The position numbers and the translations under genes were made by a program. DNA of 64,000 nt, taken from positions 22,444,001-22,508,000 of the forward strand of contig NC_043018.1 in NCBI RefSeq assembly GCF_006345805.1. Reading direction: 5' to 3'. The notes under the pieces were generated by a model. The model had not been told where the DNA came from. It made no database searches and was given only the letters and a program-made list of their open reading frames with translations. This DNA is from Octopus sinensis (lineage: Eukaryota). This document shows positions 11,101 to 64,000 of the stretch, one piece after another; the stretch's first letter is position 1, and the number at the start of each line of letters is the position of its first letter.

Positions 11101-11245
11101 GTTATATACATATATAATTTGTATACATTTATATACATATATATAATTTGTATACATTTTATTACATATATATAATTTGTATACATATATACATATATAT
11201 AATTTGTATGCATATATATAATTTGTATATCTTCATAGACATATA
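5160..11245. repeat. AT-rich 29-bp satellite, left block
   Basis: Unit AATTTGTATATATTCATATACATATATAT; period 29 measured at 7326/7355. Contains variant sub-domains and kb-scale higher-order blocks. Confidence 0.95.
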
Positions 11246-13260
11246 CAAATGTGCAACTCTCCCATGAAAAAGAAAGAGCAGACAAAGAAGCCTGGGCTAT
11301 AACAAAAAAAAAAATCTAACCCAGAGCTTTCTACAGTATGCCAAAGAAACAGCTACAGTGCACTGTAGAATAGGGCCACTCCTCGAAAAGTATGGCACAC
11401 TTACAGGATAACCAATGAGGGTAAGTGAAATACTGAATGAGCAATTCAAGAGTGTTTTCACTCCACCCCTTGGGCATCTCCAAATCACCAATCCAACTGA
11501 CATTTTTACCACTGCAGATATAAAATCAGAGGCGGCGACGATAGATTACATCGATATAAAGGAAGACGATGTAACCAAGGCTATAGATTGAAATGAAAAC
11601 AGACTCAGCTACTGGCCCCGATGGATTCCCGGCAATCCTCCTAAAAGCATGTAAGAGAGTCCTAGCAAGACCACTGCAGTTCCTCTTTCAGAGCTTCCTT
11701 GCAGCTGGCAAACTTCCAGGAAAACTGAAGGAAGGGAAAATATGCCCCATTCATAAAGGAGGTAGCAGAGCGGAAGCCAAGAACTATAGACCTATCTCTG
11801 ACCTCACACATCAGCAAGGTCATGGAACGAATAGTCAGAAGGAAGCTGATCACCTTCCTTGAAGAGAATGACTTGCTGCCCGACACTCAACATGGTTTCC
11901 GACCAGGGAGAAGCTGTTTAACTCAGCTCCTACAACACTATGACTGGGTGCTGAAACGGCTGCTCAACCACTCAAATGTGGAAGTGATATATCTCGACTT
12001 TGCAAAGGCCTTTGATAAAGTCGATCATGGAATGTTATGTCACAAACTGCGTGATCTCAACATAGTTGGAAAACTGGGAGAATGGCTTCATGACTTTGTG
12101 AAGGATAGAAGTCAGGTGGTAGTAGCCAATGGGGCCACCTCCATTAACACACAAATAGTGAGCGGTGTTCCGCAGGGCACTGTTCTGGGACCACTACTGT
12201 TCATAATGGCCCTCTCAGACATGCCCTCAGCCACGCAGAGAGCCACGATCACAAGTTATGCAGATGATACAAAAGTTTCACAGGCAATACAGAACCCTGA
12301 GGACACTAAACACCTGCAATGTGAGCTGGACGAAATATACAAGTGGGCTGAAAAGAATAGCATGCAGTTCAATGCTGGAAAGTTTCAAGCTTTATACTAT
12401 CAGCATGCAAAACTGAATGCAATACCCAATGAATACACTGGACCCGGAGGGATTGCAATCCCAGAGGCACAATCAGTGCGTGTCCTGGTATTCACATGAG
12501 TGATGACGCGACCTTTCATGTACATGTTGCTAAAATGACAATGAAATGTAGACGGCTGGCTGGATGGATTCTTAGAACCTTTAGAACAAGAGAACAAGAA
12601 ACCATGATGGTCATCTGGAAGACACTTGTCCTAAGCCACTTTGACTATTGCTCTCAGCTATGGTCACCATCCAGTGTCAAGTTGATCACAGAACTTGAGG
12701 CGATCCGACGAAGCTACACAAAGAAGATAGCCTCTATGCAGAATGTAAGCTACTGGGAAAGACTCAAGAGATTAAAATTATATTCCCTGGAGCGTAGGCG
12801 GGAAAGATATGCCATAAGATACATCTGGAAGATCCTGGAGGGAAGTGTCCTGAACTTTGGCATCGAGAGTTACGCAAATGCCAGAACTGGGCGCCACTGC
12901 GTGGTGCCTAGGACTCCAAACCTGCCATCAAGATGTAGGACAAGATTCTGTGATAGCCTGGGCTTCCGAGGCCCACAGCTCTTCAATATCCTCACGAAGA
13001 ACCTGAGAGACCTGCATGGGGTGGATACAGATGTCTTTAAAATGAAGCTGGATCTCTTCCTGTCAGGTGTCCCAGATGAACAAACTTCACGGCAGGAGGG
13101 GCAGATGAGGGCAGCTGCATCGAACTCTCTCATGCACAAAATAGCATTTGCGAGAAAGCCTCCATGAAGTGAAACCAAGTAGCAACACCAAATGGCGGTG
13201 CCCCAGCATGGCCACAGCTCATAAGCTGAAACTAGAATCAATCAATCAATCAATCAATCA
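11246..13260 (+). mobile_element. 5'-truncated non-LTR retrotransposon (CR1/L2 group, Jockey superclade) with (AATC)n tail
   Basis: RT motifs GPDG, YRPIS, QHGFRPGRSC, YLDFAKAFDKV, GVPQGTVLGPLLF and YADD; C-terminal YSLERRRERY...RAAASNSL. No APE domain. Tail (AATC)n; probable short CATATA target duplication. Clade assignment is from recalled motifs. Confidence 0.92.
11593..13167 (+). pseudogene. LINE ORF2 reverse transcriptase, frameshifted into three ORFs (11593-11862, 11822-12499, 12496-13167)
   Basis: The ORF-track segments join into one RT plus C-terminal domain; YADD at ~12257. The frameshifts may be decay or read error. Confidence 0.9.
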
Positions 13261-16200
13261 TATATATACTTTGCATATTTTCATATACATATAAGTAATT
13301 TGTATATATTCATATACATATATGTAATTCGTATATCTTCATATACATATATGTAATTTGTATATCTTAATATACATATATGTAATTTGTATATATTCAT
13401 ATACATATATATAATTTGTATATATATTCATATACATATAAATAATTTGTATATCTTCATATACATATATATAATTTGTATATCTTCATATACATATATA
13501 TAATTTGTATATCTTCATATACATATATGTAATTGTATATCTTCATATACAATATGTAATTTGTATATCTTCATATACATATATGTAATTTGTATATCTT
13601 CATATACATATATGTAATTTGTATATCTTCATATACATATATGTAATTTGTATATCTTCATATACATATATGTAATTTGTATATATTCATATACATATAT
13701 GTAATTGTATATCTTCATATATACATATGTAATTTGTATATCTTCATATACATATATGTAATTTGTATATATTCATATACATATATGTAATTTGTATATC
13801 TTCATATACATATATGTAATTTGTATATCTTCATATACATATATGTAATTTGTATATCTTCATATACATATATGTAATTTGTAATCTTCATATACATATA
13901 TGTAATTTGTATATCTTCATATACATATATGTAATTTGTATATCTTCATATACATATATGTAATTTGTATATCTTCATATACATATATGTAATTTGTATA
14001 TCTTCATATACATATATATATTTGTATATCTTCATATACATATATATAATTTGTATATCTTCATATACATATATATAATTGTATATCTTCATAACATATA
14101 TATAATTTGTATATCTTCATATACATATATATAATTTGTATATCTTCATATACATATATATAATTTGTATATCTTCATATACATATATATAATTGTATAT
14201 CTTCATATACATATATATAATTTGTATATCTTCATATACATATATATAATTTGTATATCTTCATATACATATATATAATTGTATATCTTCATATACATAT
14301 ATATAATTTGTATATCTTCATATACATATATATAATTTGTATATCTTCATATACATATATTAATTTGTATATCTTCATATACATATAATAATTTGTATAT
14401 CTTCATATACATATATATAATTTGTATATCTTCATATACATATATATAATTTGTATATCTTCATATACTATATATAATTTGTATATCTTCATATACATAT
14501 ATATAATTTGTATATCTTCATATACATATATATAATTTGTATATCTTCATATACATATATATAATTTGTATATCTTCATATACATATATATAATTTGTAT
14601 ATCTTCATATACATATATATAATTTGTATATCTTCATATACATATATATAATTTGTATATCTTCATTAACATATATATAATTTGTATATCTTCATATACA
14701 TATATATAATTTGTATATCTTCATATACATATATATAATTTGTATATCTTCATATACATATATATAATTTGTATATCTTCATATACATATATATAATTTG
14801 TATATCTTCATATACATATATATAATTTGTATATCTTCATATACATATATATAATTTGTATATCTTCATATACATATATATAATTTGTATATCTTCATAT
14901 ACATATATATATTTGTATATCTTCATAACATATATATAATTTGTATATCATCATATACATATATATAATTTGTATATCTTCATATACATATATATAATTT
15001 GTATATCTTCATATACATATATATAATTTGTATATCTTCATATACATATATATAATTTGTATATATTCGTGCGCGTGTGTATAACTTGTACATGTTCGTG
15101 CGCGTGTGTATAACTTGTACATGTTCGTGCGCGTGTGTATAACTTGTACATGTTCGTGCGCGTGTGTATAACTTGTACATATTCATACACATGTGTATAA
15201 CTTGTACATATTCATACACATGTGTATAACTTGTACATATTCATACACATGTGTATAACTTGTACATATTCATACACATGTGTATAACTTGTACATATTC
15301 ATACACATGTGTATAACTTGTACATATTCATACACATGTGTATAACTTGTACATATTCATACACATGTGTATAACTTGTACATATTCATACACATGTTAT
15401 AACTTCTACATATTCATACACATGTGTATAACTTGTACACATTCATACACATGTGTATAACTTCTACATATTCATACACATGTGTATAACTTCTACATAT
15501 TCATACACATGTGTATAACTTCTACATATTCATACACATGTGTATAACTTCTACATATTCATACACATGTGTATAACTTCTACATATTCATACACATGTG
15601 TATAACTTCTACATATTCATACACATGTGTATAACTTCTACATATTCATACACATGTGTATAACTTCTACATATTCATACACATGTGTATAACTTCTACA
15701 TATTCATACACATGTGTATAACTTGTACATATTCATACACATGTGTATAACTTGTACATATTCATACACATGTGTATAACTTCTACATATTCATACACAT
15801 GTGTATAACTTGTACATATTCATACACATGTGTATAACTTCTACATATTCATACACATGTGTATAACTTCTACATATTCATACACATGTGTATAACTTCT
15901 ACATATTCATACACATGTGTATAACTTCTACTATTCATACACATGTGTATAACTTGTACAATTCATACACATGTGTATAACTTGTACTATTCATACACAT
16001 GTGTATAACTTGTACATATTCATACACATGTGTATAACTTGTACATATTCATACACATGTGTATAACTTGTACATATTCATACACATATATATAACTTGT
16101 ACATATTCATATACATATATATAACTTGTATATATTCATATACATATATATAATTTGTATATATTCATATACAAATATATAATTTGTATATATTCATATA

Positions 16201-17214
16201 CAAATATATAATTTGTATATATTTATATACATATATATAATTTGTTATATATTTATATGCATGTATATAATTTGTATATATTATATATATGTATATAAAT
16301 ATATACTAATTATATTTATAATTATATATATTTTGTATATATTTATATACAAATATACAATTTGTGTACGTTTATATACGTATATATAATTTGTATACGT
16401 TTATATACATATATATAATTTGTATACGTTTATATACATATATATAATTTGTATACGTTTATATACATATATATAATTTGTATACGTTTATATACATATA
16501 TATAATTTGTATACATATATACATATATATAATTTGTATGCATATATATAATTTGTATATCTTCATATACATATATATAATTTGCATATTTTCATATACA
16601 TATATGTAATTCGTATATCTTCATATACATATATGTAATTTTTATACCTTCATATACATATATGTAATTTGCATACCTTCATATACATATATGTAATTTG
16701 TATATCTTCATATACATATATATAATTTGTATATATATTCATATACATATATATAATTGTATATATCATATACATATATAATTTTTATATATTCATATAC
16801 AAATATATAATTTGTATATATTCATATACAAATATATAATTTGTATATATTTATATACATATATATTATTTGTATATATTTATATGCATGTATATAATTT
16901 GTATATATTTATATATATGTATATAAATATATACTAATTATATTTATAATTATATATATTTTGTATATATTTATATACAAATATACAATTTGTGTACGTT
17001 TATATACGTATATATAATTTGTAAACGTTTTTATACATATATATAATTTGTATACATTTATATACATATATATAATTTGTATACATTTATATACATATAT
17101 ATAATTTGTATACATTTATATACATATATATAATTTGTATGCATATATATAATTTGTATATCTTCATATACATATATATAATTTGCATATTTTCATATAC
17201 ATATATGTAATTTG
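13261..17214. repeat. AT-rich 29-bp satellite, right block, including GC-shifted variants at 15068-16140
   Basis: Same unit with TATATCTTCA variant, then AACTTGTACATGTTCGTGCGCGTGTGTAT and AACTT(G/C)TACATATTCATACACATGTGTAT domains. Confidence 0.95.
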
Positions 17215-18885
17215 CTTAGGGTCCAGGGAGTGTCAGGAGCAGGGCTCTGGGCGCCATTGGGCTCAATGTCCGCGGCTACGAGACAACAGTGAGCGCTATG
17301 GCGACCAGAGCTCGCTCTGGGCGCCATTGGGCTCAATGTCCGCGGCTACGAGACAACAGTGAGCGCTATGGCGACCAGAGCTCGCTCTGGGCGCCATTGG
17401 GCTCAATGTCCGCGGCTACGAGACAACAGTGAGCGCTATGGCGACCAGAGCTCGCTCTGGGCGCCATTGGGCTCAATGTCCGCGGCTACGAGACAACAGT
17501 GAGCGCTATGGCGACCAGAGCTCGCTCTGGGCGCCATTGGGCTCAATGTCCGCGGCTACGAGACAACAGTGAGCGCTATGGCGACCAGAGCTCGCTCTGG
17601 GCGCCATTGGGCTCAATGTCCGCGGCTACGAGACAACAGTGAGCGCTATGGCGACCAGAGCTCGCTCTGGGCGCCATTGGGCTCAATGTCCGCGGCTACG
17701 AGACAACAGTGAGCGCTATGGCGACCAGAGCTCGCTCTGGGCGCCATTGGGCTCAATGTCCGCGGCTACGAGACAACAGTGAGCGCTATGGCGACCAGAG
17801 CTCGCTCTGGGCGCCATTGGGCTCAATGTCCGCGGCTACGAGACAACAGTGAGCGCTATGGCGACCAGAGCTTGCTCTGGGCGCCATTGGGCTCAATGTC
17901 CGCGGCTACGAGACAACAGTGAGCGCTATGGCGTTGGTCGCACCACAATAAACAGGAGGCGAGGCTGTAGGGTTACCCGAGCATAAAAGATGAGCATTAT
18001 TTGTAATTCAATGGTACAACAGTGTAACAGTTTGCTTTGACATACACACTGCATAAATTGTCAAGTAAATGAGAGGCATCTTTGCCTCCACTGATTCAGT
18101 TGCAAAGTGTAGAGTAAAATTTATTTGATTGCAGACCTCCTTTCAGTCTTTTTATTATCACTCGGTCACACATAGTCCCCAGATGGTAACATTGATTTCA
18201 AGGCCTTCCCAGATGAGTGACTGGTTATTCGAAGACATTTATAGATTTTAAATTTATTCTGTCCAGTTACGTATCAGTATAGTGGTCATTTGCAAACTAC
18301 AGAGGTGACACTTTCATTTCTCCTTAGCTCTCACGTCAAACAGTTGTTAATGTTGCCTGTCACCTGGATGGTGAGGAATCCTACATTAGGAGTGGTAACG
18401 ACTAGGGTAGGGTAACTGACTGCTTATTGTGATCATTCGTCTTTTGGTTTCCTGTAGCTTTGCTCTCTTTTACAAACCCAGTGAACATATATTTCCTATT
18501 TCAAAGAAATTCAAACAATAGATATAAGACCCAAGTTAAAAAGATTTTCAACAATTCAACTTCTCTGGTTGACATTAAGATGCCCACCCCAACAGGGGCC
18601 TTAACTCTCACATTTTAGAGCTCCATGACCTTCATTTTTCAGGAACAAAATCTTTTTAACAAGTTAAATAAGACTGGAATTTTGGAATATGCGCATAAAA
18701 ATCAGGATTATGGGATACATGTGGCACGATTACAATTTTTTAGGGTGTGTGAGATTGAAATAACCCTCATCTGCAATTTTGATGAAATTCGAAACATAGA
18801 TATTCCAGTTCATCACAGAAGATATAACAGAAAAGTCTAATTCTCCAATTGAATGTAATCGGGTAACGCCGGGTATCTCTGCTAG
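17215..18885 (+). mobile_element. Probable Helitron remnant carrying the 70-bp array
   Basis: Left flank CTTAGGGT..GGAGTGT matches the Helitron-like segment at 3408. A 3' end CGGGTAACGCCGGGTATCTCTG-CTAG|T lies at 18860-18886. Continuity of the middle is not proven. Confidence 0.4.
17245..17933 (+). repeat. GC-rich tandem array, ~10 x 70 bp, each unit an imperfect hairpin
   Basis: GCGCCATTGG recurs at exactly 17251, 17321 ... 17881. Units are identical except one C>T near 17872. Confidence 0.97.
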
Positions 18886-23552: not shown

Positions 23553-24023
23553 CGTGTGTGTAGTTCAAATTTACAGAAAACAAACGACGAAGACAGGTGA
23601 AAGAACAACAAGCAGAGTTTGAAGGTTTTTTAGTTATAGAAATCGACCCCAGGACTTACTCTTTGGAACCCTAGCACTTATTCTATCGGTTTCTTTTTCC
23701 AAAACGCTAAGCTACGGGGACGTGTATATATATACATATATATATATATTGATGTTGAACTTAAAAATGGTCTATGACTATTTAATTTTTTCCCACTAGG
23801 CCGCTGGTGGCAAAAAGAATTCTAAAAAATTTTTTTGCCACCCTATATTGATTAATTATATATATATATTATATATAATGTGAAATAGAAAGATGAATAA
23901 TCTTGTTGTAGATTAATCAAAGTTAACCGATACCTTAGTAGCAAAATCACAGCAGTAAACAGCACGGTTGGAGGTACAACCATCTGGCGTTGCAACCGTG
24001 CGCTGGTGCGGATAATTGAAATT

Positions 24024-24288
24024 AAAACATTATTGGTGAATTGAAGAAATGGAGCTGAACGCAGATTGAACCGAAATCGTTTTATTTCATTCTACACGTG
24101 TTTCGAAGGCACAAATTACCAAAATCCGATTGAATAATGGGACCATATTGTGTCTTTCTCTTCAGGAAGAAAAAGGAAATCCGTTAGAGAAACAAAAACA
24201 GAACAGAGCGGAGCAAAAAAACGTGTAGAATGAAATAAAACGATTTCGGTTCAATCTGCGTTCAGCTCCATTTCTTCAATTCACCAAT

Positions 24289-24296
<8 letters not shown>
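24024..24296. repeat. Perfect 76-bp inverted repeat (24024-24099 and 24221-24296), PLE-type inverted terminus
   Basis: The arms compared base by base are exact reverse complements; the right arm runs into (TA)n. Confidence 0.92.
24090..24168 (-). ncRNA. Type I hammerhead motif with palindromic stem III and long stem II
   Basis: UUC-CUGAAGA-[GAAAGACACAA...UUGUGCCUUC]-GAA-ACACGUGU-A-GAA; core intact, cleavage triplet GUA, stem I only 3 bp. Confidence 0.7.
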
Positions 24297-24319
<23 letters not shown>

Positions 24320-24769: not shown

Positions 24770-24910
24770 CAAAATTCTACCAGGACACCTGATGAAGGCT
24801 GGAGAGTAAATCAGCCGAAATTTTGTGGTAGCAACAAACAAGATGAGGACAAATATCCGTCCAATGTAAAAAATGTAAATATTGTACAGAATTCCTCATC
24901 TCTAAAATAT
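24770..24910 (+). mobile_element. 3' end of Poseidon-type PLE with decayed hammerhead (same family as 29620-29760)
   Basis: CTGATGAAGGCTGG-AGAGTAAAT-CAGCC-GAAA...ACAAGATGAGGACAAAT...AATTCCTCATCTCTAAAATATA is shared with the copy at 29641. Confidence 0.7.
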
Positions 24911-28500: not shown

Positions 28501-28904
28501 CCCAAAAACATACTATCCACACCAATTAGGAAGAAATGAGGGGATGAAACCCACAAACTCACCACAGTCTGTCTACCCTATCGGAAAGGCCTCTCGGAAA
28601 AAAATACTAAAGATATGCGGTCCATATGACATCAGGGCAGTATTCAAAAGTAATACAACACTTCGCAAAAATCTCCAATAGAAGAGAATATGACCAAACA
28701 CTGGCTGTACTCCATCCCATGCGGTTGTGGTAGGTTATACGAAGGTGAAACATGCCGCCCCCTCAAAATAAGGGTAGAGGAATATCGTAAAGCTGTGACA
28801 CGAAAAATCAGGTATAGCTGATCATGTATGGAAAAACGGAGACCACCTCGCCCATGGGAGGAAGTTAAAATAATAGACAGAGAACACCATTGGAAAATAC
28901 GAAA

Positions 28905-29375
28905 ACTAGAGCTGACAGAAACGTTAGCACGCCAGGCGAAATGCGTAGCCGTATTTCGTCTGTCGCTACGTTCCGAGTTCAAATTCCGCCGAGATTGACT
29001 TTACCTTTTATCCTTTCGGGGTCGATAAATTAAGTACCTATTTCTTTATTACCCACAAGGGGCTAAACACAGATGGGACAAACAAGGACAGAAATAGGTA
29101 TTAAGTCGATTACATCGACCCCAGTGTGTAACTGGTACTTAATTTATCGACCCCGAAAGGATGAAAGGCAAAGTCGACCTCGGCGGAATTTGAACTCACA
29201 ACGTAACGCAGACGAAATACCGCTAAGCATTTCGCCCGGCGTGCTAACGTTTCTGCCAGCTCGCCGCCTTAATTAAGTACCAGTTACGCACTGGGGTCGA
29301 TGTAATCGACTTAAAACCTTTTGTCTGTCCTTGTTTGTCCCCTCTGTGTTTAGCCCCTTGTGGGCAATAAAGAAT
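28905..29375 (+). mobile_element. Deu/Nin-type SINE, split by a nested antisense copy
   Basis: Head at 28905-29038, remainder at 29271-29375. Confidence 0.85.
29040..29268 (-). mobile_element. Full Deu/Nin-type SINE nested in a same-family copy
   Basis: Flanked by the target duplication AATTAAGTACC (29028-29038 and 29271-29281). Confidence 0.9.
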
Positions 29376-30025
29376 GGAAAACTAAAGAGGCAGCAGATAT
29401 GCTAGGACACAATAACATCCAAAGGAGACCGAGTGCAGATATGAGTAGAATATGGGAACCGGTATAAACGAAAGATACAAAAATATTAGGTTTATAAGAC
29501 CTAAAATTCTGGGTTCAATCCCAAGCAGTGACTTGAATAAATAATAATAACCAAATGCTAGTCCCAATTAAAAATATCTTAAGAATGAGAACAAAATACC
29601 CCATTAGTCACATAATAGGTTTTGGTTCAAAATTCCACCAGAAAACCTGATGAAGGCTGGAGAGTACATCAGCCGAAATGTTGTGGTAACAACAAGCAAA
29701 GTGAGGACACAAATCTGTCCAATATAAATAATGTACAGAATTCTTCATCTCTAAAATATATCTGTATATCTATCTATATATATATAGTTATGTTCGTAGC
29801 CACTCAGCATGGCTGTTCTGTTCGAATGGACTTTACTGCGATTTTTTTATTCACAAGAGAACATCTCTTCTAGCTGGTTAACGATGCATGGCTGCATCCG
29901 AGATATTGCGAGCAGGGAAGCGAACCCCTACAACATTCTATCTATGGGAGCAGCAGACCAGCCTGGTTTCAGGCTATTTCTGCCTCCTTTCAGTACGGGA
30001 CGCTGTATATGTATGCATATATATA

Positions 30026-30791: not shown

Positions 30792-31199
30792 CTCTCTTTT
30801 ACTCTTTTACTTGTTTCAGTCATTTGACTGTGGCCATGCTGGAGCACCGCATTTAGTCGAGCTAATCGACCCCGGGACTTATTCTTAGTAAGCCCAGTAC
30901 TTATTCCATCGGACTCTTTTGACGAACCGCTATGTTACGGGGACGTAAACACACAAGCATCGGTTGTCAAGCAACGCTAGGGGGACAAACATAGACACAC
31001 AAACACACACACACCATACACATATATACATATATACGACAGGCTTCTTTCAGTTTCCGTCTACCAAATCCACTCACAAGGCTTTGGTCGGCCCGAGACT
31101 ATAGTAGAAGACTCTGGCCCAAGATGCCACGCAGTGGGACTGAACCCAGAACCATGTGGTTGGTTAGCAAGCTACTTACCACACAGCCACTCCTGCGCC
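30792..31199 (-). mobile_element. Full CORE-type SINE
   Basis: Head AGGCGCAGGAGTGGCTGTGTGG through the tail. A plus-strand head follows at 31338-31455, forming an inverted pair. Confidence 0.88.
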
Positions 31200-31207
31200 T
31201 GTGTATG

Positions 31208-31292
<85 letters not shown>

Positions 31293-31456
31293 GTATGTAT
31301 ATATATATATATATATATCTATATATATATATCCACCCGCAGGCGTGGCTGTGTGGTTCTGTGTTCAGTCCCACTGCGTGGTACCTTGGGCAAGTGTCTT
31401 TTGTTATAGCTTCGGGCCAACCAAAGTCTTGTGAGTGGATTTGGTAGAAGCCCGTC

Positions 31457-54431: not shown

Positions 54432-54534
54432 AGATAGATGGTAAATGTATTATTTTTCATTCCCATCGGAGTTTATCCCTAATAGTGGTTTGGCTTTTAG
54501 CTGTTCATTCTAGCGTGCAAGGATACCTCTTATG

Positions 54535-54575
<41 letters not shown>

Positions 54576-54842
54576 TGCACATACTTGCATAAACACATTC
54601 TTGCACGCACTGGCACACATACACACAAACACACACAAACATATATATATATATATATATATAAATAATAAATATAGGGAATAAATCCAAATTTACAGGG
54701 AAAAAAATCAGATTAGGATTAAATCCAATTTTATAGTAAAATATTATAAAATATTATTAGAGGACAAAACCACTATTTGCAAAACAAACAAGGAAAGACT
54801 TAATCAATACATAAAAATTTTAATAAATAGTCAAAAAAAACG

Positions 54843-54885
54843 CCACTACAATTGTTTCTTGTCTTGATCGACAATCTTCAGGTGG
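54843..54885 (-). ncRNA. Intact minimal type I hammerhead motif
   Basis: CCAC-CUGAAGA-UUGUC(GAUCAA)GACAA-GAA-ACAAUUGU-A-GUGG; all three stems pair; palindromic stem III; GUA site. Confidence 0.85.
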
Positions 54886-55318
54886 ACTTCCAATCTAAAA
54901 TATCAATATTTTAAAATATAAAAATAATAATTTTAAAATAATTAAAGTATGAATGAAAAAATATAAATATATAATCCATATATAACCTATATATAATCCA
55001 TATAATCAATATATAAACAATATATAAACTAAAATAAACCTATCACAATTAATATAAAATATAAAATATAAAATAAAATATATAAAACAAAACAAAAAAA
55101 ATAATAATAATATAATAATAAACTATATATACACCAAACACATATACCTAATTATATATAACCATATCTAACTACATACACTAAATCACACCCCTATATA
55201 TATATCCCTATACATACACATAAAAACGTCTAGGCAACTATAAATAAATAAAATAGCTAATACTTCAACACAATACGTATTCATACTCACACACACACAC
55301 ACATACAACCCACATTCA

Positions 55319-57175
55319 CGCTCTAGAAAACGGACATCACTTAAAATTATGAACGGAGAAATGGAATAAATGGAATTAAAAATTATATCACTTGGTGTAA
55401 AACGAACAATACTTAAAAATTATGAATGATGAAAACAATGCAATAAAACAACAGACATCGCAAATAGACACAAATTACTACGAATTCCTAACAAACCTAC
55501 CATGATAAACCAAAACTCATAAAAAATATAATGAATAAAATCTCCCTTTACTAAACTCTATAAATACCTATATAGCAATCCCCCTAACCTAACATTCACA
55601 CACAAATACACACACGTAAACCACACACCCACGACATATACAAATACCCACACCACTTACACATCCTATACATACATATAAACCTCAACATATACTCCAA
55701 AAACCCACTCACCCCCACACAGACAATAAACACAAAAATTATGAATGGATTCTTTTATAAAACTACCATGATAAGCTAAAACTCACAAAACATAAATGAT
55801 AAAACCTCCCTTTACTAAACACTATAACATACTTATATAGCAATCCCTTTAACCTATACATTCACACACAAATACACACACGTAAACCACACACCCATAA
55901 CAATACAAACACCCACCCCACCACACACACCCACAAGTACATATAAGCCTCAACATATACACCAAACAAAATTACTTACCAAGGAACTTAACATATGTAT
56001 ATAAAAAGTATAACCGCTCTGGAAACGAACATCTTTTAAAATAATGAATGGAGAAATGGAATAAATGGAATTAAAAATAATATTCACGTGGCACAAAACG
56101 AACACCACTCAAAACTTATGAATGAAACATGTAATAAAACAACCAACATCGAAAATAGACAAATTACCACGAATTCCCTAAAAAAAAACATGATAAACCA
56201 AAACTCTAAAAATATATAACGATAAAATCTCCCTTGCTAAACTCTATAACAAACCTATATAGCAATCCCCCTAACCTAAACATTCACACACAAAAAACAC
56301 ACACGTAAACCCACAGACCCACGACTTATACACATACCTATACTAACTTATAAACCTCAATATACACCAAAAACCCACTCCCTCCCCACACAGACAAATT
56401 AACACATACATCCCAAAACCTAAATAACAAACCCATATACATTCACACACAAACACACACACACGCAAAACACATCACACAACAGATACATATACTCCCT
56501 CACATATACGCATATAATACTCACTAAACTCGATAATACAACAATATTTACACACCCACACTCATACAGATAAATAAATTATACAACTAAAAACTCACAC
56601 ACAATCTCATATACAAAACACTCCAATAAAAAACAACATTAAATACATCGTAATTAACCAGAATATCAAAAATAACAATATGACATAAGGAGAAATAAAA
56701 TACATACTTACAAGTCAGTTCAAATATGAAGTGAAATTAAATTCTTAGCCGTTAAAAAACCAAACCAAAATTACGTTACCATAGAAATATAACTTATGTA
56801 AAAAAAGAATACGCGCCATGGAAAGTAAACGTCATTTAAAATTATGAATGGAGAAACAGAATAAATGGAACTAAAAACTATATCCACGTGGCAAACCAAC
56901 ACTACTTAAAAAAAATTATTATGAATGGATTCTTTAATAAAACTACCATAATAAATTATTATATACAATTATGAGCTTTAGCTCATCTTAGCAGCTCTAA
57001 CAAACAACTTGCAGTAACCCAAATCTATTCTCGATGCCTGCTTACTACTACACTATTCCATTCCAATTCCAAGCAACGCTAGCCCACACCCGGTTACAAT
57101 TCCCAACTCCACCCATTCATTCACAATTTCAACGACGTCCAACTCCACAGCGCTACATATAAGCCTCAACATATA
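55319..57175. repeat. Strand-biased modular repeat (3 x module A ~115 bp; 3 x module B ~250 bp)
   Basis: Module A at 55319, 56014 and 56813 (AAAATTATGAATGGAGAAA.GGAATAAATGGAA). Module B at 55450, 55750 and 56140 (CTACCATGATAA..TATAGCAATCCC..CATTCACACAC..CCTCAACATATAC). The plus strand is visibly G-poor. Confidence 0.85.
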
Positions 57176-57489
57176 CACGGAGATTCGCTTTCAATCCGTG
57201 CGGATGGGTGAGAGTATACATTGAGTGTAGTGATGGGGCTCCCATTACTATACACATTTGTACCTGTGTGGTAGTCTCTCATGTGTATATACACGCACGG
57301 GTACAAATGCAGGGGGTACACGCGCACGGCATGTACGTGTACCCCCTCACATGTACATATGCATGCTAGTTGGGCTCGATATGTGCAACAATGTAATCGA
57401 GCCCGCATACATGCATATGGGCGAGTTGCACAATCAAAATACGCACACGTGTGTGTGTGCGTTCACTGGTTGTGCAATTCACCCATCTG
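57176..57489 (+). ncRNA. Candidate multibranch structured RNA or ssDNA element (antisense to the PLE ORF)
   Basis: Six stems read directly from the sequence plus a closing stem. Stem irregularities are mostly G-T on this strand. Function unknown. Confidence 0.6.
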
Positions 57490-58374
57490 GGTGTGAGTGG
57501 GGTAAGCGTATTGCTGTGGATGTCGAGCTTGATACGTATGTATATGAGTGTGTATTGGGAGGTTGTACGTATTTATTGTGTGCATGTGCTTCACGCACGT
57601 GCGTCCATGTATGATGAAATATATTGGGATTGCTATGTGGGTGTAAATTGGGTATAGAGGGGGGAGTTTTGTCATTGTATGGGTGTAGGTTTCATTTGTG
57701 ATGGTGGTTTGTTGGTGATTTAATATGTTCTGTATTTGGGGTTAGTTATGTATTATTCTAGTGTGTATAATTGTATACATATGATTGGTGTGAGTAGGAT
57801 TACGCCCATTTTTGGGGATGTATGTTTATTTGTCCGTATAGGGCGGGAGTGGCCGTTTGGTGTATATGTTGAGGCTCACATGCAATTCAGGTACGCGCGA
57901 ATGAAGTGGGCACTTATATTTGTTATGGGTGTGTATACTTTATTATAACAGACAATACCCAAATAAAATCTGTCAATTCAACATACCCAAATAAAAAACA
58001 AAAACAAAGGGATCGTAAACATTCACACATACATACAAAACTCAATAAAAACACCACTAAATAACACCCATCAACATATAAATATATCCTCCAAAATACA
58101 TATAACAAATGCATAATAAAAATACATAATAAAATAAAATAAAATAAAAAAAATATATATATAAATAAAGAAAATAAAAAAATCTAATATAAATTATTAA
58201 AGTTTTAACATACCATAAACTGTTATATTAATATACATTAAAAATGAACTAATTAAAACAAAGAAATATCAATAAAGACTAACTATAATTAAAGCCTAGA
58301 CTACATAACCAAAAAATATATTATCTAAACTAATTTAAACTAAACTAAAGTAACCTAATAGGGAACATTATTTG

Positions 58375-60133
58375 CTATTTATCATGAAACTTATTATATA
58401 GGTAAAGTAACTTATGTCTGCATTTTATTTTGCGCTCTTCACCAGTATTAAGTAAATTATCATACTTATAAAATAAAATTTCTTTAAACTCATTAGAGCA
58501 TAAATAACAACAATTAGCTCCTATAGTATATGATTTAGTTTTACAAATTATTTCCCAAATTTAACTATAATTAATATTTAGTGATTTAGACTCCAAATGT
58601 ACTTACTAAGTCCGGTTGAGTTGATTAAGTTTTTATTTTTAAAAGAATTCATATGTTGTGCGATTCTTAGTTTTATTTTTGAGGAAGTAGAACCTATATA
58701 AACCGCTTTTGGGTAATTATTATTCTTAAAGTTATTATCATGTAATGTAACTATACATTTATACACTACATCGTTAATATCACAATTATTATTTAATATA
58801 CAATTAGATTTATCTCTACATGTACAATTAATATAAGTCTTATCATTATTAATATTATTATCAAATAATTTCTTTTATAAAATTATTCAGTTTATATTTA
58901 TTAAATGAAGAAATAATGTTACAACATTATTAGTGGTAGAATAACCAACTCCAAATTATAAAAGAGAAAATGTTTCTATATTTACGATTATCTCTAATAA
59001 ATAGTTCTATAACATCTAAAATCTCTTTAATAATATTCGTTTTTACTTGATCTCCATAAGGAACTATTAACCATATTTTTATCTTAATAACCTTATTATT
59101 ATTATCATTATTATAAATATATTTATAATTCTTTATTTTTATAAAATTATTATCAAAATATATCTATGTACAGCATTAAGGAATTATTAATATTATTAAT
59201 TTTATCAATATAATTATTATAATAATTATTAAATTTATTTTTATTTTTATTATTCTTATTTATATTATTATTATTATTATATTTATTATTATTATTATAT
59301 TCTTATTTATATTTTTATCATTTTTATTATTTTTTTTATAATATCTATTATTTTTACCACTAAAACCTAACAAAATTATAATTATTATTAGAAGTATCTC
59401 GAAAATTATCAATTAAATCTTTATCACTAATATTATAAAATTTAATATTCCTATTATAACCTGCCCCTCAAGGGCCTCATTATAATAATTAGCATGTTTA
59501 TTAAAATCTCTATATCATAAGAGAGTAATGAAATACGTTTACTTATATTATTAATCAACGATTTTTTAATAGAAAATGTGTGATTACTATTAACATTTAT
59601 ATATGTAAGGTTCTCATTAAGTTATGATATGGTTGTGTTTTACCTGTAATAAGATAAAATAACATCTAAATAATTAACATTATAATTATCCTTATATATA
59701 GTAATACTAAACCAATCTTTTAAAGAAACTATATAGTTTTTTCTTATATACTTCTAGATTCCTATTAGTACAATTCTTTGTAACTAGTAGAAGAAGATTC
59801 GTCTCTATATAAACCACCCTCTATCTTAAGATTTTCTAATTGGAGTTCAGATAAAAGAAAAATACCTACTAAATCAGTAGCCTGTGCAGAATCTGGTGCT
59901 CCCCATAGGTATATCCAAAAATCTCTAGTATCATTCCTAGCCCATAATTTATTTTTATATTTAATTAGCGTTTCCTAGCCATTTTTTTAATACATTAACT
60001 TCTTCCCGTGACATACCCACTTATTCATTGCGAAAATAAGCGCTTATTAACACAATTTCATTAATAGAAGAATAAAATTATCTATATCTATTTGAATAAA
60101 TTATAACGATTTTTATCTTAATTTATAAAACCA
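58375..60133 (-). pseudogene. PLE polyprotein fragment: RT (motif A to thumb), Asn-rich linker, CxC region, GIY-YIG endonuclease; many indels
   Basis: Across frameshifts: WF..DIDNFYSSINE..DIPMGAPDSAQATDLVGIFLL..GGLYRD(D)..NYLDV..YINVNSNH..KRIS..YYNEALEGAGY..IWL.VPY..VKTNI..CTCRDKSNCILNNNC..VVYKC..VYIGSTS..RIAQHMNSF..LSKYIW..NWEII..CYLC..KCRHK; TAG at 58375-58377. Confidence 0.88.
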
Positions 60134-63100
60134 TAATATAAGTAAACGTATTTCATTACTCTCTATGATATAGAGATTTTAATAAACATGCTATTATTAT
60201 AATGAGGCCCTTTGAGGGGCAGGTTTATATAGGAATATTAAATTTTATAATATAGTGATAAAGATTTAATTGATAATTTTCGAGATACTTCTAATAATAA
60301 TTATAATTTTGTTAGGTTTAGTGGGTAAAAATAATAGATATTATAAAAAAAATAATAAAAATGAAAAAATAAAATAAGAATAATAATAATAATAATAAAT
60401 ATAATAATAATAATAATATATTAAATAAGAATAATAAAAATAAAAATAAATTAATAATTATGATAATAATTTATTGATAAAATTAATAATATTAATAATT
60501 CCTAAATGTGTTATACATAGATATAATGTTGATAATAAGTTTATTAAATAAAGAATTATAAATATATATTTATAATAATGATAATAATAATAAGGTTATT
60601 AAGAATAAAATATGGTTAAAGTTCCTTATGGAGATCAAGTAAAAACGAATATTATTAAAGCGATTTAGATGTTATAGAAACTATTTATTAGAGATAATCG
60701 TAAATATAGAAACATTTCTCTTTTAAAATTTTGGAGTTGGTATCTACCACTAATAAATGTTGGTAACATTATTTCTTCTTTAATAAATATAAACTGAATA
60801 ATTTTATAAAAAGAAAATATTTGATAATAATATTATAATGATAAGACTTATATTAATTGTACATGTAGAGATAATCTAATCTAATATGTATATTAAATAA
60901 TATATAATTGTGATATTAACGATTGTAGTGTATAAATGTATAGTTACATTAATGATAATAACTTTAAGAATAATATTACCCCAAAAGCGGTTTATAGGTT
61001 CTACTTCCTCAAAAAATAAAAACTAAGAATCGACCAACATATGAATTCTTTAAAAATAAAACTTAATCAATCAACCGGACTTAGTAAGTACATTTGGAGT
61101 CTTAATCAATAATATTAATTATGTTAATTGGGAAATAATTTGTAAAACTAAATCTATACTATAGGAGCTAATTGTTGTTATTTATGCCTAATGAGTTTAA
61201 AGAAATTTTATTTTATAAGTATGATAATTTACTTAATTATGGTGAAGAGCGCAAAATAAAATGCAGACATAAGTTTACTTTACCTATATAATAAGTTTAA
61301 TGATAAATAGCAATAATAGTTCCCTATTAGGTTACTTTAGTTTAGTTTAAATTAGTTTAGATAATATATTTTGGTTATGTAGTCTAGGCTTTAATTATAG
61401 TTAGTCTTTATTGATATTTCTTTGTTTTAATAGTTCATTTTTACTTTATTAATATAACAGTTTATGGTATGTTAAAACTTTAATAATTTATATTAGATTT
61501 TTTTTATTTTCTTTATTTATATATATATTTTTTTTTTTTATTTTATTTTATTATGTATTTTTATTATGCATTTGTTATATGTATTTGGAGGATAGATTTA
61601 TATGTTGATGGGTGTGTTATTTAGTGGTGTTTTTATTGAGTTTTGTATGTATGGTGTGAATGTTTACGATCCCTTTGTTTTTGTTTTTTCTTTGGTATGT
61701 TGAATTGACAGATTTTATTTGGGTATTGTCTGTTATAATAAAGTATACACACCCATAACAAATATAAGTGCCCACTTCATTCGCGGTACCTGGAATTGCA
61801 TGTGAGCCTCAAACATATACACCAAACGGCCACTCCCGCCCTATACGGACAAATAAACACATACATCCCCAAAAATGGGCGTAATCCCACTCACACCAAT
61901 CATATGATACAATTATTACACTAGAATAATACATAACTAACCCAAATATACAGAACATATTAAAAATCACCAACAAACCACCATCACAAAGAAACCTACA
62001 CCCATACAATGACAAAACTCCCCCCTCTATACCCAATTTACACCCACATAGCAATCCCAATATATTCATCCATACATGGACGCACGTGCGTGAAGCACAT
62101 GCCACACAATAAATACGTACAACATCCAATAACACTCTATCATACGTATCAAGCTCGACATCCACAGCAATACGCTTACACCCACTCACACCCGAGGGTG
62201 AATTGCACAACCAGTGAACGCACACACACACGTTGCGTATTTTGATTGTGTGCAACTCGCCCATATGCATGTATGCGGGCGCGATTACATGTTGTTGCAC
62301 ATATCGAGCCCAACTAGCATGCATATGTACATGTGAGGGGGTACACGTACATGCCGTGCGCGTTGACCCCCTGCATTTGTACCCGTGCGTGTATATTACA
62401 CATGGAGACTACCACACAGGTACAAATGTGTATAGTAATGGGAGCCCCATCACTACACTCAATGTATACTCTCACCCATCCGCACGGATTGAAAGCGAAT
62501 CTCCGGTGTATATGTTGAGGCTTATATGTAGCGCTGTGGAGTTGGACGTCGTTGAAATTGTGAATGAATGGGTGGAGTGGGAATTGTAACCGGGTGGTGG
62601 GCTAGCGTTGCTTGGAATTGGGAATGGAATAGTAGTAGTAAAGCAGGCATCGAGAATAGATTTGGGTTACTGTAAGTTGTTTGTTAGAGCTGCTAAGATG
62701 AGCTAAAGCTCATAATTGTATATAATAATTTATTATGGTAGTTTATTAAAGAATCCATTCATAATAAATTTTTTTAAGTAGTGTTGGTTTGCCACGTGGA
62801 TATAGTTTTTAGTTCCATTTATTCTGTTTCTCCATTCATAATTTTAAATGACGTTTACTTTCCATGGCGCGTATTCTTTTTTACATAAGTTATATTTCTA
62901 TGGTAACGTAATTTTGGTTTGGTTTTTTTAACGGCTAAGAATTTAATTTCACTTCATAATTGAAACCGACTTGTAAGTATGTATTTTATTTCTCCTTATG
63001 TCATAGTGTTATTTTGATATTCTGGTTAATTACGATGTATTTAATGTTTTTTTATTGGAGTGTTTATGTATATGAGATTGTGTGTGAGTTTTTAGTTGTA

Positions 63101-64000
63101 TAATTTATTTATCTGTATGAGTGTGGGTGTGTAAATATTGTTGTATATATCGAGTTTAGTGAGTATGTATATGCGTATATGTGAGGGAGTATATGTATCT
63201 GTTGTGTGTGTGTGTTTGTCTCGTGTGTGTGTGCGTGTGTGTGAATGTGTATATGGGTTTGTTATTTAGTTTTGGGGTATGTGTTAATTTGTCTGTGTGG
63301 GAGGGGAGGAGTGGGTTTTTGGTGTATATTGAGGTTTATAATTAGTAGGTATGTGTATAAGTCGTGGGTCTTTGGTTTACGTGTGTGTTTTTGTGTGTGA
63401 ATGTTTAGGTTAGGGGGAATTGCTATATAGGTTGTTATAGAGTTTAGCAAAGGGAGATTTTATCGTTATATGTTTTTAAGAGTTTTGTTTATCATGGTTT
63501 TTTTAGGGAATTCGTGGTTACTTTGTCTATTTCGATGTTGGTTGTTTTATTACATTGTTTCCTCATAAGTTTTGAGTGGTGTTCGTTTTGCCACGTGAAT
63601 ATTATTTTAATCCATTTATTCCATTTCTCCATTCATTATTTTAAAAGATGTTCGTTCCAGAGCGGTTATACTTTTTTATACATATGTTAAGTTCCTGGTA
63701 AAGTAATTTTGTTTGGTGTATATGTTGAGGCTTATATGTACTTGTGGGTGTGTGTGAGTGGGTGGGTGTTTGTATTTGTTATGGGTGTGTGGTTACGTGT
63801 GTGTATTGTGTGTGAATGTATAGGTTAAAGGGATTGCTATATAAGTATGTTATAGTGTTTAGTAAAGTGAGGTTTTCTCATTTATGTTTTGTGAGTTTTA
63901 GCTTTCATGGTAGTTTTATAAAAGAATCCATTCATAATTTGTGTTTATTGTCTGTGTGGGGTTGAGTGGGTTTTTGGAGTATAATGTTGAGGTTTATATG
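60133..64000 (+). mobile_element. Second, more 5'-truncated inverted copy of the same PLE (runs off the window)
   Basis: Reverse complement of 55675-59551; ORF remnant ends at TAG 61308-61310; copy of the structured element at 62193-62508. Confidence 0.85.

What the first reader, a model, noticed from the sequence alone, without database searches (positions are those of the whole stretch)
57176..57489. ~300-nt multibranch hairpin element with strand-specific wobble pairs beside a telomerase-related RT
On + there are stems at 57176-57200, 57226-57254 (13 bp), 57255-57309 (~16 bp), 57311-57347 (12 bp perfect), 57356-57419 (10+9 bp) and 57423-57480 (14+6 bp). GGATGGGTG/CACCCATCT closes the last five into one junction. 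About 8 stem irregularities are G-T on this strand and would be A-C on the other, implying selection on a single-stranded molecule antisense to the ORF. That molecule could be an antisense ncRNA or the first-strand cDNA (retron-like). The element sits where strand bias flips and is preserved at 62193-62508. I recognise no known family.
Basis: partly seen in the sequence, partly recalled or inferred. Interest (0 to 1): 0.88.

Follow-up and report, generated by a model that had tools for sequence, protein, structure and literature searches.

The report
Hairpin cluster inside a Penelope-like retrotransposon
The ~314-base hairpin cluster is real, but it is one copy of a locally repeated unit in the oversized tail of a decayed Penelope-like retrotransposon, and nothing here shows it to be a conserved RNA gene.

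Summary
57176-57489 folds far better than dinucleotide shuffles on both strands (RNA: + -161.9 kcal/mol, z -10.7; - -135.7, z -9.1).

The context changes the reading:
- The neighbouring RT is a frameshifted, 5'-truncated Hydra-clade Penelope-like element (PLE) on the - strand. It has a PLE-type hammerhead ribozyme at 54885-54843 and ends in a (TA)n tract.
- The "preserved" copy at 62193-62508 is the other arm of the element's head-to-head inverted duplication (55675-59551 against 64000-60133). It is not independent conservation.
- The cluster lies in about 3.5 kb between stop codon and ribozyme. Four relatives have 70-200 nt there.
- It is the only composition-balanced copy of a repeat unit. 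At least three neighbouring copies differ from it almost only by G>A and T>C. One is a fold-back copy that turns round at the tip of hairpin 6.
- The wobble polarity is weaker than claimed: 12 G.T against 4 A.C (p = 0.08). With DNA parameters the two strands score alike.

No Rfam family matches and no homologue was found outside the window.

Most likely this is a nested fold-back duplication product of retroelement replication or repair. A selected cis-acting structure is not excluded. Modest interest.

The parts
57176..57200 (+). H1: small 6-bp hairpin just outside the closed domain
   Evidence: Minimum-energy fold
57201..57489 (+). Closed multibranch domain. Outer 11-bp stem 57201-57211 with 57479-57489 encloses H2 57225-57253, H3 57255-57309, H4 57311-57347, H5 57353-57422 and H6 57425-57478.
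   Evidence: Pair counts 101 Watson-Crick, 12 G.T, 4 A.C, 8 transversion-type oppositions.
57453..57935 (+). Inverted (fold-back) copy of the cluster unit. It turns round at 57451/57452, the tip of H6. Its first 37 nt form the 3' arm of H6 and the 3' strand of the outer stem. The rest is C-poor (9%) and G/T-rich on the + strand.
   Evidence: z 18.7 against dinucleotide shuffles; aligned part 57453-57699: G>A 37, T>C 27 in unit orientation
55300..57175 (+). Tandem array of degenerate direct copies of the same unit, G 3-8% on the + strand. Examples are U0 55504-55743 and U1 56398-56603.
   Evidence: z 12.1 and 14.5; G>A 48 and 42; A>G 1 and 1
57936..58374 (-). A-rich (on the + strand), G-poor spacer between the stop codon and the repeat block. 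Parts of it resemble unit pieces in direct orientation.
   Evidence: (families D9, D20)
58375..60154 (-). Frameshifted, 5'-truncated ORF of a Hydra-clade Penelope-like element. It holds RT motifs, thumb, a CxCx5C linker, a GIY-YIG domain and CxxC...CxH. The stop codon TAG is at 58377-58375.
   Evidence: Defining motifs from PMC8557442 section 11.
54843..54885 (-). PLE-type minimal type-I hammerhead ribozyme: CCAC / CUGAAGA / UUGUC-GAUCAA-GACAA / GAAA / C-AAUU-G / UA / GUGG
   Evidence: The description in PMC4209133 matches. Relatives carry one 70-200 nt after the stop.
54641..54676 (.). (TA)n microsatellite at the left end of the composite insertion, the probable target site
   Evidence: Hydra-clade elements insert into (TA)n, and L003 shows the same.
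60133..64000 (+). Right arm of the head-to-head inverted duplication. It is a more 5'-truncated copy of the same element and runs off the end of the window.
62193..62508 (-). Second copy of the hairpin cluster. It is the reverse complement of the first and lies in the right arm.

Best explanation
The segment is a nest of DNA palindromes, not a free-standing gene.

**Shown**
- It is one copy of a roughly 250-300-nt unit.
- At least two degenerate copies lie in the tandem array to its left.
- A fold-back copy lies directly to its right. The turn-round point is the tip of hairpin 6.
- All of this sits in an abnormally long stretch between the stop codon and the hammerhead ribozyme of a Hydra-clade Penelope-like retrotransposon.
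- That element is present as two head-to-head copies.

**Inferred**
- The hairpins and the larger fold-back were made by repeated snap-back or template-switch copying. The copying took place on a strand of + polarity, which is the polarity of this element's first-strand cDNA. It could have happened during reverse transcription or during repair.
- The excess of G.T over A.C in the stems comes from a directional transition process, either G.T mispairing or deamination of single-stranded DNA. The flip of strand composition follows the orientation of the unit copies, which carry the same kind of directional G>A and T>C change, with the opposite sign to the cluster's own changes. Neither needs selection on an RNA.
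- On this reading the cluster has no function of its own.
For: **Context**
- Collinear tblastn and BLASTP matches to full-length relatives.
- 746 HMMER hits to the endonuclease region.
- Motifs fit the published Hydra-clade description.
- Hammerhead and (TA)n are present.
- A head-to-head arrangement with a 5'-truncated inverted copy is the published PLE insertion pattern.

**Extra block**
Relatives L003 to L006 have the ribozyme 70-200 nt after the stop. Here the distance is 3490 nt.

**Paralogy**
- The cluster aligns to U1, to U0 and to the reverse complement of its right flank with z 14.5, 12.1 and 18.7 against dinucleotide shuffles. The wrong-orientation control gives z 2.0.
- The offset stays constant across successive windows.
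- The inverted copy abuts the cluster at 57451/57452.

**Directional changes**
- G>A against A>G: 42:1, 48:1 and 37:7.
- T>C against C>T: 17:8, 17:2 and 27:7.
- For both wobble pairs of H6, two paralogues agree that the cluster itself changed A>G and C>T on the + strand.
- About half of the wobble T are TpG opposite a cG.

**Weak strand signal**
12:4, p = 0.077. DNA-parameter z-scores are equal on the two strands.

**No sign of selection between the two copies**.
Against: - The cluster alone keeps a balanced composition, even at its 88 unpaired positions (G 19%, C 22%). Its paralogues lost 67-95% of their G.
- The balanced island coincides with the limits of the folded domain. That is what purifying selection on a structure would give, and my explanation leaves it unexplained.
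- Error rates of 60-90% at G are far above ordinary polymerase error.
- The direction of change is inferred from palindrome logic, not from an outgroup: purine runs opposite pyrimidine runs need G.
- The purine/pyrimidine alternation of these sequences inflates transition-tolerant comparisons. Controls slid by 2 columns score almost as well.
- Only one independent locus is available.
Confidence: 0.45

Rival explanations
1. The cluster is a cis-acting structured module of a retroelement, for example a platform for RT or RNP binding, priming or packaging. Selection kept it intact in the active lineage. Its redundant duplicates decayed under the element's directional mutation bias.
For: - The island of balanced composition coincides with the folded domain.
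- Its loops are undepleted as well.
- At least three paralogues in the same array are saturated with transitions.
- Stability is very high on both strands.
- Structured 3' modules are required by several non-LTR retrotransposons (own knowledge).
Against: - The whole 3.2-kb block is absent from the four relatives examined, so it is not a general requirement of this clade.
- The G.T bias is on the strand antisense to the element's RNA.
- No independent copies exist, so no covariation can be measured.
Confidence: 0.25
2. A non-coding RNA, or a small-RNA precursor such as a hairpin siRNA or miRNA-like cluster, is transcribed from the + strand, antisense to the ORF, and its fold is under selection.
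For: - The + strand folds 26 kcal/mol better as RNA.
- G.T outnumbers A.C 12 to 4.
- H6 and H4-H5 give weak sub-threshold resemblance to miRNA precursor models.
Against: - The polarity is not significant (p = 0.08) and matches the G/T excess of the neighbouring flank.
- Rfam scores are 21-25 bits against gathering scores of 56-101.
- The stems have at most 26 bp, shorter than canonical animal pri-miRNA stems (own knowledge).
- There is no second independent copy and no expression data.
Confidence: 0.08
3. It is an assembly artefact. Fold-back chimeric long reads created the large palindrome and perhaps the local inversions.
For: - The arms differ mostly by indels and transversions, which looks like noise.
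- Palindromic chimeras are a known long-read artefact (own knowledge).
Against: - Head-to-head truncated copies are the published PLE insertion pattern.
- An independent assembly, L003, shows the same architecture.
- Short hairpins with wobble pairs and transition-saturated paralogues are not what chimeric reads produce.
Confidence: 0.07
4. It is a small foldback or MITE-type transposon, or another unrelated repeat, that happened to insert here.
For: - The window holds several MITE-like foldbacks.
- The domain has an 11-bp terminal inverted repeat.
Against: - There is no clear target-site duplication at the ends of the outer stem.
- There is no other copy in 64 kb apart from the palindrome partner.
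- The cluster is collinear with the neighbouring repeat units, so it belongs to the array.
- The other foldbacks in the window are single long hairpins.
Confidence: 0.05
5. It is a retron-like msDNA or msRNA template copied by the neighbouring RT.
For: A hairpin-rich element lies next to an RT.
Against: - The RT is a eukaryotic PLE RT fused to a GIY-YIG endonuclease. It is not a retron RT.
- The window is repeat-rich eukaryotic DNA with an animal-type LINE fragment.
- No retron RNA family matches.
Confidence: 0.01

Closest known systems
Complex tandem and inverted insertion structures of Penelope-like elements (Craig et al. 2021, PMC8557442; Hydra clade)
   Same: - RT followed by a C-terminal GIY-YIG domain.
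- A CxCx5C linker, no CCHH motif, and CxxC...CxH.
- A hammerhead ribozyme downstream of the ORF.
- Insertion into (TA)n.
- An inverted 5'-truncated copy abutting head to head.
   Different: - Hydra-clade elements are described as shorter than 3 kb.
- The four relatives examined have 70-200 nt between stop and ribozyme.
- This copy has about 3.5 kb there, filled with a tandem and inverted repeat array and the hairpin cluster.
Structured 3' UTR modules recognised by the RT of non-LTR retrotransposons, such as R2 and stringent-type LINEs (own knowledge)
   Same: A stable multi-hairpin RNA domain downstream of an RT ORF.
   Different: - No binding data exist.
- The domain is not shared by relatives.
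- The wobble bias lies on the antisense strand.
Hypermutated retroelement copies: G>A by APOBEC-type deamination of cDNA, or G>A with U>C by RT under biased dNTP pools (own knowledge)
   Same: Strand-specific, near-saturating G>A changes together with T>C in the paralogues of the cluster.
   Different: - The copies lie side by side in one array and not at dispersed sites.
- No clear dinucleotide context appears.
- One copy is spared.
Hairpins derived from (TG)n(TA)n(CA)n simple repeats, such as the mir-297/466 type
   Same: - Alternating purine-pyrimidine tracts that fold back on themselves.
- Weak Rfam resemblance.
   Different: - All scores are far below the gathering thresholds.
- Several stems, such as GGGGGTAC and GGGCTCGAT, are not simple repeats.
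Branched terminal hairpins of parvovirus genomes (own knowledge; an analogy of shape only)
   Same: Small palindromes enclosed by an outer stem.
   Different: - The position is internal, not terminal.
- There are no viral genes.
- There are five inner hairpins.

Membership tests
Hydra-clade Penelope-like element (the neighbouring RT) | RT followed by a C-terminal GIY-YIG endonuclease | tested here: met
   Collinear matches to P0062 residues 63-589 on the - strand, 60154-58411. RT pieces give E 3e-13 and 2e-9. The endonuclease region gives 746 HMMER hits. Relatives give a sub-threshold Pfam GIY-YIG match.
Hydra-clade Penelope-like element (the neighbouring RT) | [quoted passage not shown] | tested here: met
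   CTCRDKSNC, CYLC...E...N...CRH in the translation, compared with the description. This is a motif comparison by eye. BLASTP of the last piece alone was not significant.
Hydra-clade Penelope-like element (the neighbouring RT) | N-terminal RWK motif and DKT motif | not testable with these tools
   The window copy is 5'-truncated. The full-length relative P0070 has RIRWK and ADKT.
Hydra-clade Penelope-like element (the neighbouring RT) | Hammerhead ribozyme motif and insertion into (TA)n | tested here: met
   Hammerhead at 54885-54843. (TA)n at 54641-54676. The Rfam hammerhead models did not report it.
Hydra-clade Penelope-like element (the neighbouring RT) | Short element, under 3 kb | tested here: not met
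   At least 5.4 kb from 60154 to about 54680, because of the 3.2-kb repeat block.
Hammerhead ribozyme or retrozyme (for the cluster itself) | CUGAUGA...GAAA catalytic core inside the element; tandem monomers | tested here: not met
   No core pattern in 57176-57489. No ribozyme family at E up to 10.
Any Rfam family | Score at or above the gathering threshold | tested here: not met
   0 hits in the window at gathering thresholds. Only sub-threshold miRNA-like hits at E up to 10.
Retron | Retron-type RT with an adjacent msr/msd region, in a bacterial setting | tested here: not met
   The RT is a PLE type with GIY-YIG. The window is repeat-rich eukaryotic DNA with an animal-type LINE fragment. No retron RNA family matches.
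MITE or foldback transposon | Terminal inverted repeats, target-site duplication and many dispersed copies | tested here: inconclusive
   There is an 11-bp outer stem but no clear duplication. No other copy in the window. The source genome could not be searched.
Conserved structured RNA (a general test) | Covariation among independent homologues | not testable with these tools
   No homologue was found by protein word searches, exact ORF look-ups or DNA pattern scans. The single second copy shows only pair-breaking differences.

The most novel reading that the evidence does not exclude
The cluster is a selected structured module of a retroelement, acting as RNA or as first-strand cDNA, for example for RT binding or self-priming. 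It was kept intact while every redundant duplicate beside it was erased by a strand-specific G>A and T>C hypermutation process. That would be a natural experiment showing purifying selection on a fold within a single element.
Probability: 0.15. Interest if true: 0.6.

Novelty: new variant of a known kind. Interest (0 to 1): 0.3.

Why it matters
As it stands the finding is mostly housekeeping. A striking fold turns out to belong to the messy tail of a retrotransposon, and its "conservation" is an inverted duplicate.

Two things may interest specialists in mobile elements:
- A Hydra-clade Penelope-like element carries a 3.2-kb repeat array between its ORF and its ribozyme.
- A single unmutated, hairpin-rich repeat copy is surrounded by copies saturated with strand-specific G>A and T>C changes.

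If that contrast reflects selection, it would point to a cis-acting structure in a retroelement class whose mechanism is poorly known. If it reflects error-prone snap-back copying, it would be a fossil of how these elements build their tandem and inverted structures.

Tried and rejected
- **Rfam.** The search at gathering thresholds over the whole window and the search at E up to 10 over 54500-64000 gave only sub-threshold miRNA-like hits.
- **tRNA scan.** No tRNA gene in the window.
- **Bacterial promoter and terminator scan.** Uninformative.
- **Exact look-ups of window ORFs.** Nothing on record, so the source genome could not be reached.
- **Protein word searches.** The endonuclease fragment and the 171-aa ORF that overlaps the repeat both found nothing.
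- **Pfam on the frameshifted translations.** No significant family.
- **DNA pattern scans.**
  - Metagenome contigs gave two unrelated bacterial hairpins.
  - Genome contigs gave none.
  - Viral contigs gave none.
- **Hairpin clusters in relatives.** Scans of loci L003 to L006 found only palindrome centres and MITE-like foldbacks. None of them shares sequence with the block.
- **Protection of paired bases.** I tested whether pairing shielded the cluster from the G>A process. Rejected, because the unpaired positions are not depleted.
- **Cluster structure projected onto paralogue U1.** Purine/pyrimidine compatibility is only modestly better in register than when slid by 2 columns, because the sequence alternates. 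I do not rely on it.
- **Dinucleotide context of the G>A changes.** No clear preference.
- **MAFFT alignment of the ribozymes.** Poor, so they were parsed by script and by eye instead.

Full report
**1. The observation**

- H1 is a 6-bp hairpin at 57176-57200.
- An 11-bp outer stem (57201-57211 with 57479-57489) encloses five hairpins: H2 57225-57253, H3 57255-57309, H4 57311-57347, H5 57353-57422 and H6 57425-57478.

| Strand and parameters | Energy (kcal/mol) | z against dinucleotide shuffles |
|---|---|---|
| + strand, RNA | -161.9 | -10.7 |
| - strand, RNA | -135.7 | -9.1 |
| + strand, DNA | -83.3 | -9.2 |
| - strand, DNA | -75.4 | -9.7 |

A 150-nt sliding scan of 54700-58500 finds significant structure only at 57100-57550. 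So the fold is real and local.

It is not the only strong fold in the window. Several other places reach similar energies. The four foldbacks listed in section 10 are single long MITE-like hairpins, and the 15101-15400 region is a palindromic satellite. The GC-rich array at 17244-17933 was not inspected fold by fold.

**2. The wobble polarity**

The + strand fold has 12 G.U pairs and one 1x1 C.A mismatch. When bases that face each other in symmetric internal loops are counted too, there are 12 G.T, 4 A.C and 8 transversion-type oppositions. The two-sided binomial gives p = 0.077. About half of the wobble T are TpG facing a cG, which is the look of CpG decay. The polarity is a hint, not a demonstration.

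**3. The "preserved" copy**

The copy at 62193-62508 is the reverse complement of the cluster. It lies in a large palindrome, 55675-59551 against 64000-60133, 94.5% identical over 3951 columns, whose right arm runs off the window.
- Inside the cluster, the differences that fall in stems all break pairs in the right-hand copy, and none is compensatory. That copy folds to -136.7 kcal/mol.
- Over the whole arms, transversions and indels outnumber transitions. This looks like assembly noise.
- The two copies therefore count as one observation.

**4. The neighbouring RT**

No ORF is intact, but the - strand from about 60154 down to 58375 translates, across frameshifts, into recognisable retrotransposon protein.
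- It holds an RT core (GAPDSAQATDLVGIFLL...GGLYRDE) and a thumb (NYLDVIL...).
- A CxCx5C linker (CTCRDKSNC) follows.
- The GIY-YIG domain (VVYKC...YIGSTS...RIAQH) comes next.
- The translation ends with CYLC...CRHK.

An exhaustive HMMER search with the 98-aa endonuclease piece gave 746 hits. The full-length relatives P0070 and P0062 show RWK, DKT, CxCx5C, YRDD and CxxC...CxH. These are the features Craig et al. 2021 list for the Hydra clade of Penelope-like elements.

tblastn of P0062 gives collinear matches for residues 63-589. BLASTP of the RT pieces gives E 3e-13 and 2e-9. PLE RTs are the sister group of telomerase RTs, so "telomerase-related RT" is right.

**5. Ribozyme and target site**

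At 54885-54843 on the - strand lies a type-I hammerhead: CCAC / CUGAAGA / UUGUC-GAUCAA-GACAA / GAAA / C-AAUU-G / UA / GUGG. Helix III is one base pair capped by a palindromic four-base loop. This is the form described for metazoan PLE hammerheads, which are thought to act as dimers. The Rfam models did not report it.

A (TA)n tract at 54641-54676 ends the insertion. This fits the (TA)n preference of the clade.

The head-to-head arrangement, with one copy more 5'-truncated than the other, is the standard PLE insertion pattern. An independent locus, L003, shows the same thing.

**6. An oversized tail**

In four related loci the hammerhead follows the stop codon by 70-200 nt.

| Locus | Stop codon to hammerhead |
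|---|---|
| L003 | +190 nt |
| L004 | +68 nt |
| L005 | +98 nt |
| L006 | +98 nt |
| This window | 3490 nt (stop at 58377-58375) |

The extra sequence, about 55150-57950, has about 40% G+C against about 18% for the ORF. It shares no sequence with the relatives. It consists of tandem units with extreme strand composition.
- From 55150 to 57175 the + strand has G at 3-12%.
- From 57490 to 57935 it has C at 9%.
- From 57936 it is G-poor again.

**7. What the cluster is within that block**

Transition-tolerant alignment shows that the cluster is collinear with neighbouring units.

| Paralogue | Coordinates | Orientation | z against dinucleotide shuffles | G>A : A>G | T>C : C>T |
|---|---|---|---|---|---|
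| U1 | 56398-56603 | direct | 14.5 | 42:1 | 17:8 |
| U0 | 55504-55743 | direct | 12.1 | 48:1 | 17:2 |
| Right flank | 57453-57699 | inverted | 18.7 | 37:7 | 27:7 |

- The z-scores are and the counts, in unit orientation. The wrong-orientation control gives z 2.0.
- The axis of the inverted copy is at 57451/57452, the tip of H6.
- The 3' arm of H6 and the 3' strand of the outer stem are therefore the first 37 nt of the inverted copy.
- The flip of strand bias follows the orientation of the units.

Because runs such as GGGGG opposite CCCCC and GGGCTCGAT opposite ATCGAGCCC need G, I infer that the balanced, hairpin-forming state is ancestral and that the G-poor copies are derived. This is an inference and was not tested with an outgroup.

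CA-rich and GT-rich simple-repeat tracts are also common elsewhere in the window. Part of the skew may be ordinary for this genome.

**8. How it most likely arose**

I favour nested fold-back (snap-back or template-switch) copying, with confidence 0.45.
- The strand that carries the G.T pairs has the polarity of this element's first-strand cDNA.
- For H6, two paralogues agree that the cluster itself changed A>G and C>T on that strand.
- Self-templated copying with G.T mispairs, or deamination of single-stranded DNA, gives G.T over A.C without any selection.
- PLEs are known for complex tandem and inverted products. Their enzyme cuts and extends both target strands in vitro.

This reading leaves one thing unexplained. 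This one copy escaped the G>A and T>C changes even in its 88 unpaired positions. The island of balanced composition also matches the limits of the fold.

That contrast is the best argument for the main rival, a selected cis-acting module (confidence 0.25). Against that rival stand three points.
- The block is absent from the relatives.
- The wobble bias lies on the antisense strand.
- There is no independent copy.

The other readings score lower:

| Reading | Confidence |
|---|---|
| Antisense ncRNA or small-RNA precursor | 0.08 |
| Assembly artefact | 0.07 |
| MITE or foldback transposon | 0.05 |
| Retron-like element | 0.01 |

**9. Known families and novelty**

No Rfam family matches. There is no ribozyme core in the cluster and no tRNA in the window. 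No homologue was found outside the window.

The context is a known kind of element with an unusual tail, so I rate it a new variant of a known kind. Interest is 0.3. It would rise if other genomic copies showed covariation.

**10. Seen in passing**
- A CR1/L2-like LINE RT fragment at about 11200-13400.
- A 29-bp satellite at 14500-17214 and a 70-bp GC-rich array at 17244-17933.
- MITE-like foldbacks at 24001-24300, 28901-29200, 31080-31420 and 41801-42100.
- Near-identical CTGATGA...GAAA motifs (one base apart) at 24789 and 29647.

Noticed in passing
window 54843-54885 (- strand): PLE-type minimal type-I hammerhead ribozyme. Helix III is 1 bp with a palindromic AAUU loop. The Rfam models missed it. 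It lies about 170 nt from a (TA)n tract at 54641-54676.
   Followed up: yes
window 55150-57175, 57490-57935: Repeat copies with extreme, orientation-linked strand composition (G 3-8% or C 9%). They differ from the hairpin cluster almost only by G>A and T>C. The cause is unknown: hypermutation, error-prone copying, or ordinary drift of simple repeats.
   Followed up: partly
window ~11200-13400 (+ strand): Frameshifted CR1/L2-like LINE reverse transcriptase fragment (Pfam RVT_1, E 1e-24) embedded in very AT-rich tandem repeats. It indicates an animal genome.
   Followed up: partly
window 14500-17214: 29-bp AT-rich satellite of about 94 copies. The unit is partly self-complementary and folds into one long hairpin.
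   Followed up: no
window 17244-17933: 70-bp GC-rich (63%) tandem repeat, 9.9 copies at 99% identity, strongly self-pairing.
   Followed up: no
window 24001-24300, 28901-29200, 31080-31420, 41801-42100: Single long near-perfect foldbacks, MITE-like. The one at 31080-31420 surrounds a (TA)n/(CA)n tract.
   Followed up: partly
window 24789-24820 and 29647-29678 (+ strand): Near-identical CTGATGA-AGGCTG...CAGCC-GAAATTTT motifs (one base apart) 4858 bp apart. This may be a minimal hammerhead of another repeated element.
   Followed up: no
window 55675-59551 vs 60133-64000: The two arms of the palindrome differ mostly by indels and transversions. This suggests long-read assembly noise, so the broken ORF may be less decayed than it looks.
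   Followed up: partly
L003 5289-8270: A related Hydra-clade element in an ENA metagenome contig shows the canonical layout: (TA)n on both sides, an inverted 3'-end fragment at the 5' side, and a hammerhead 190 nt after the stop.
   Followed up: yes
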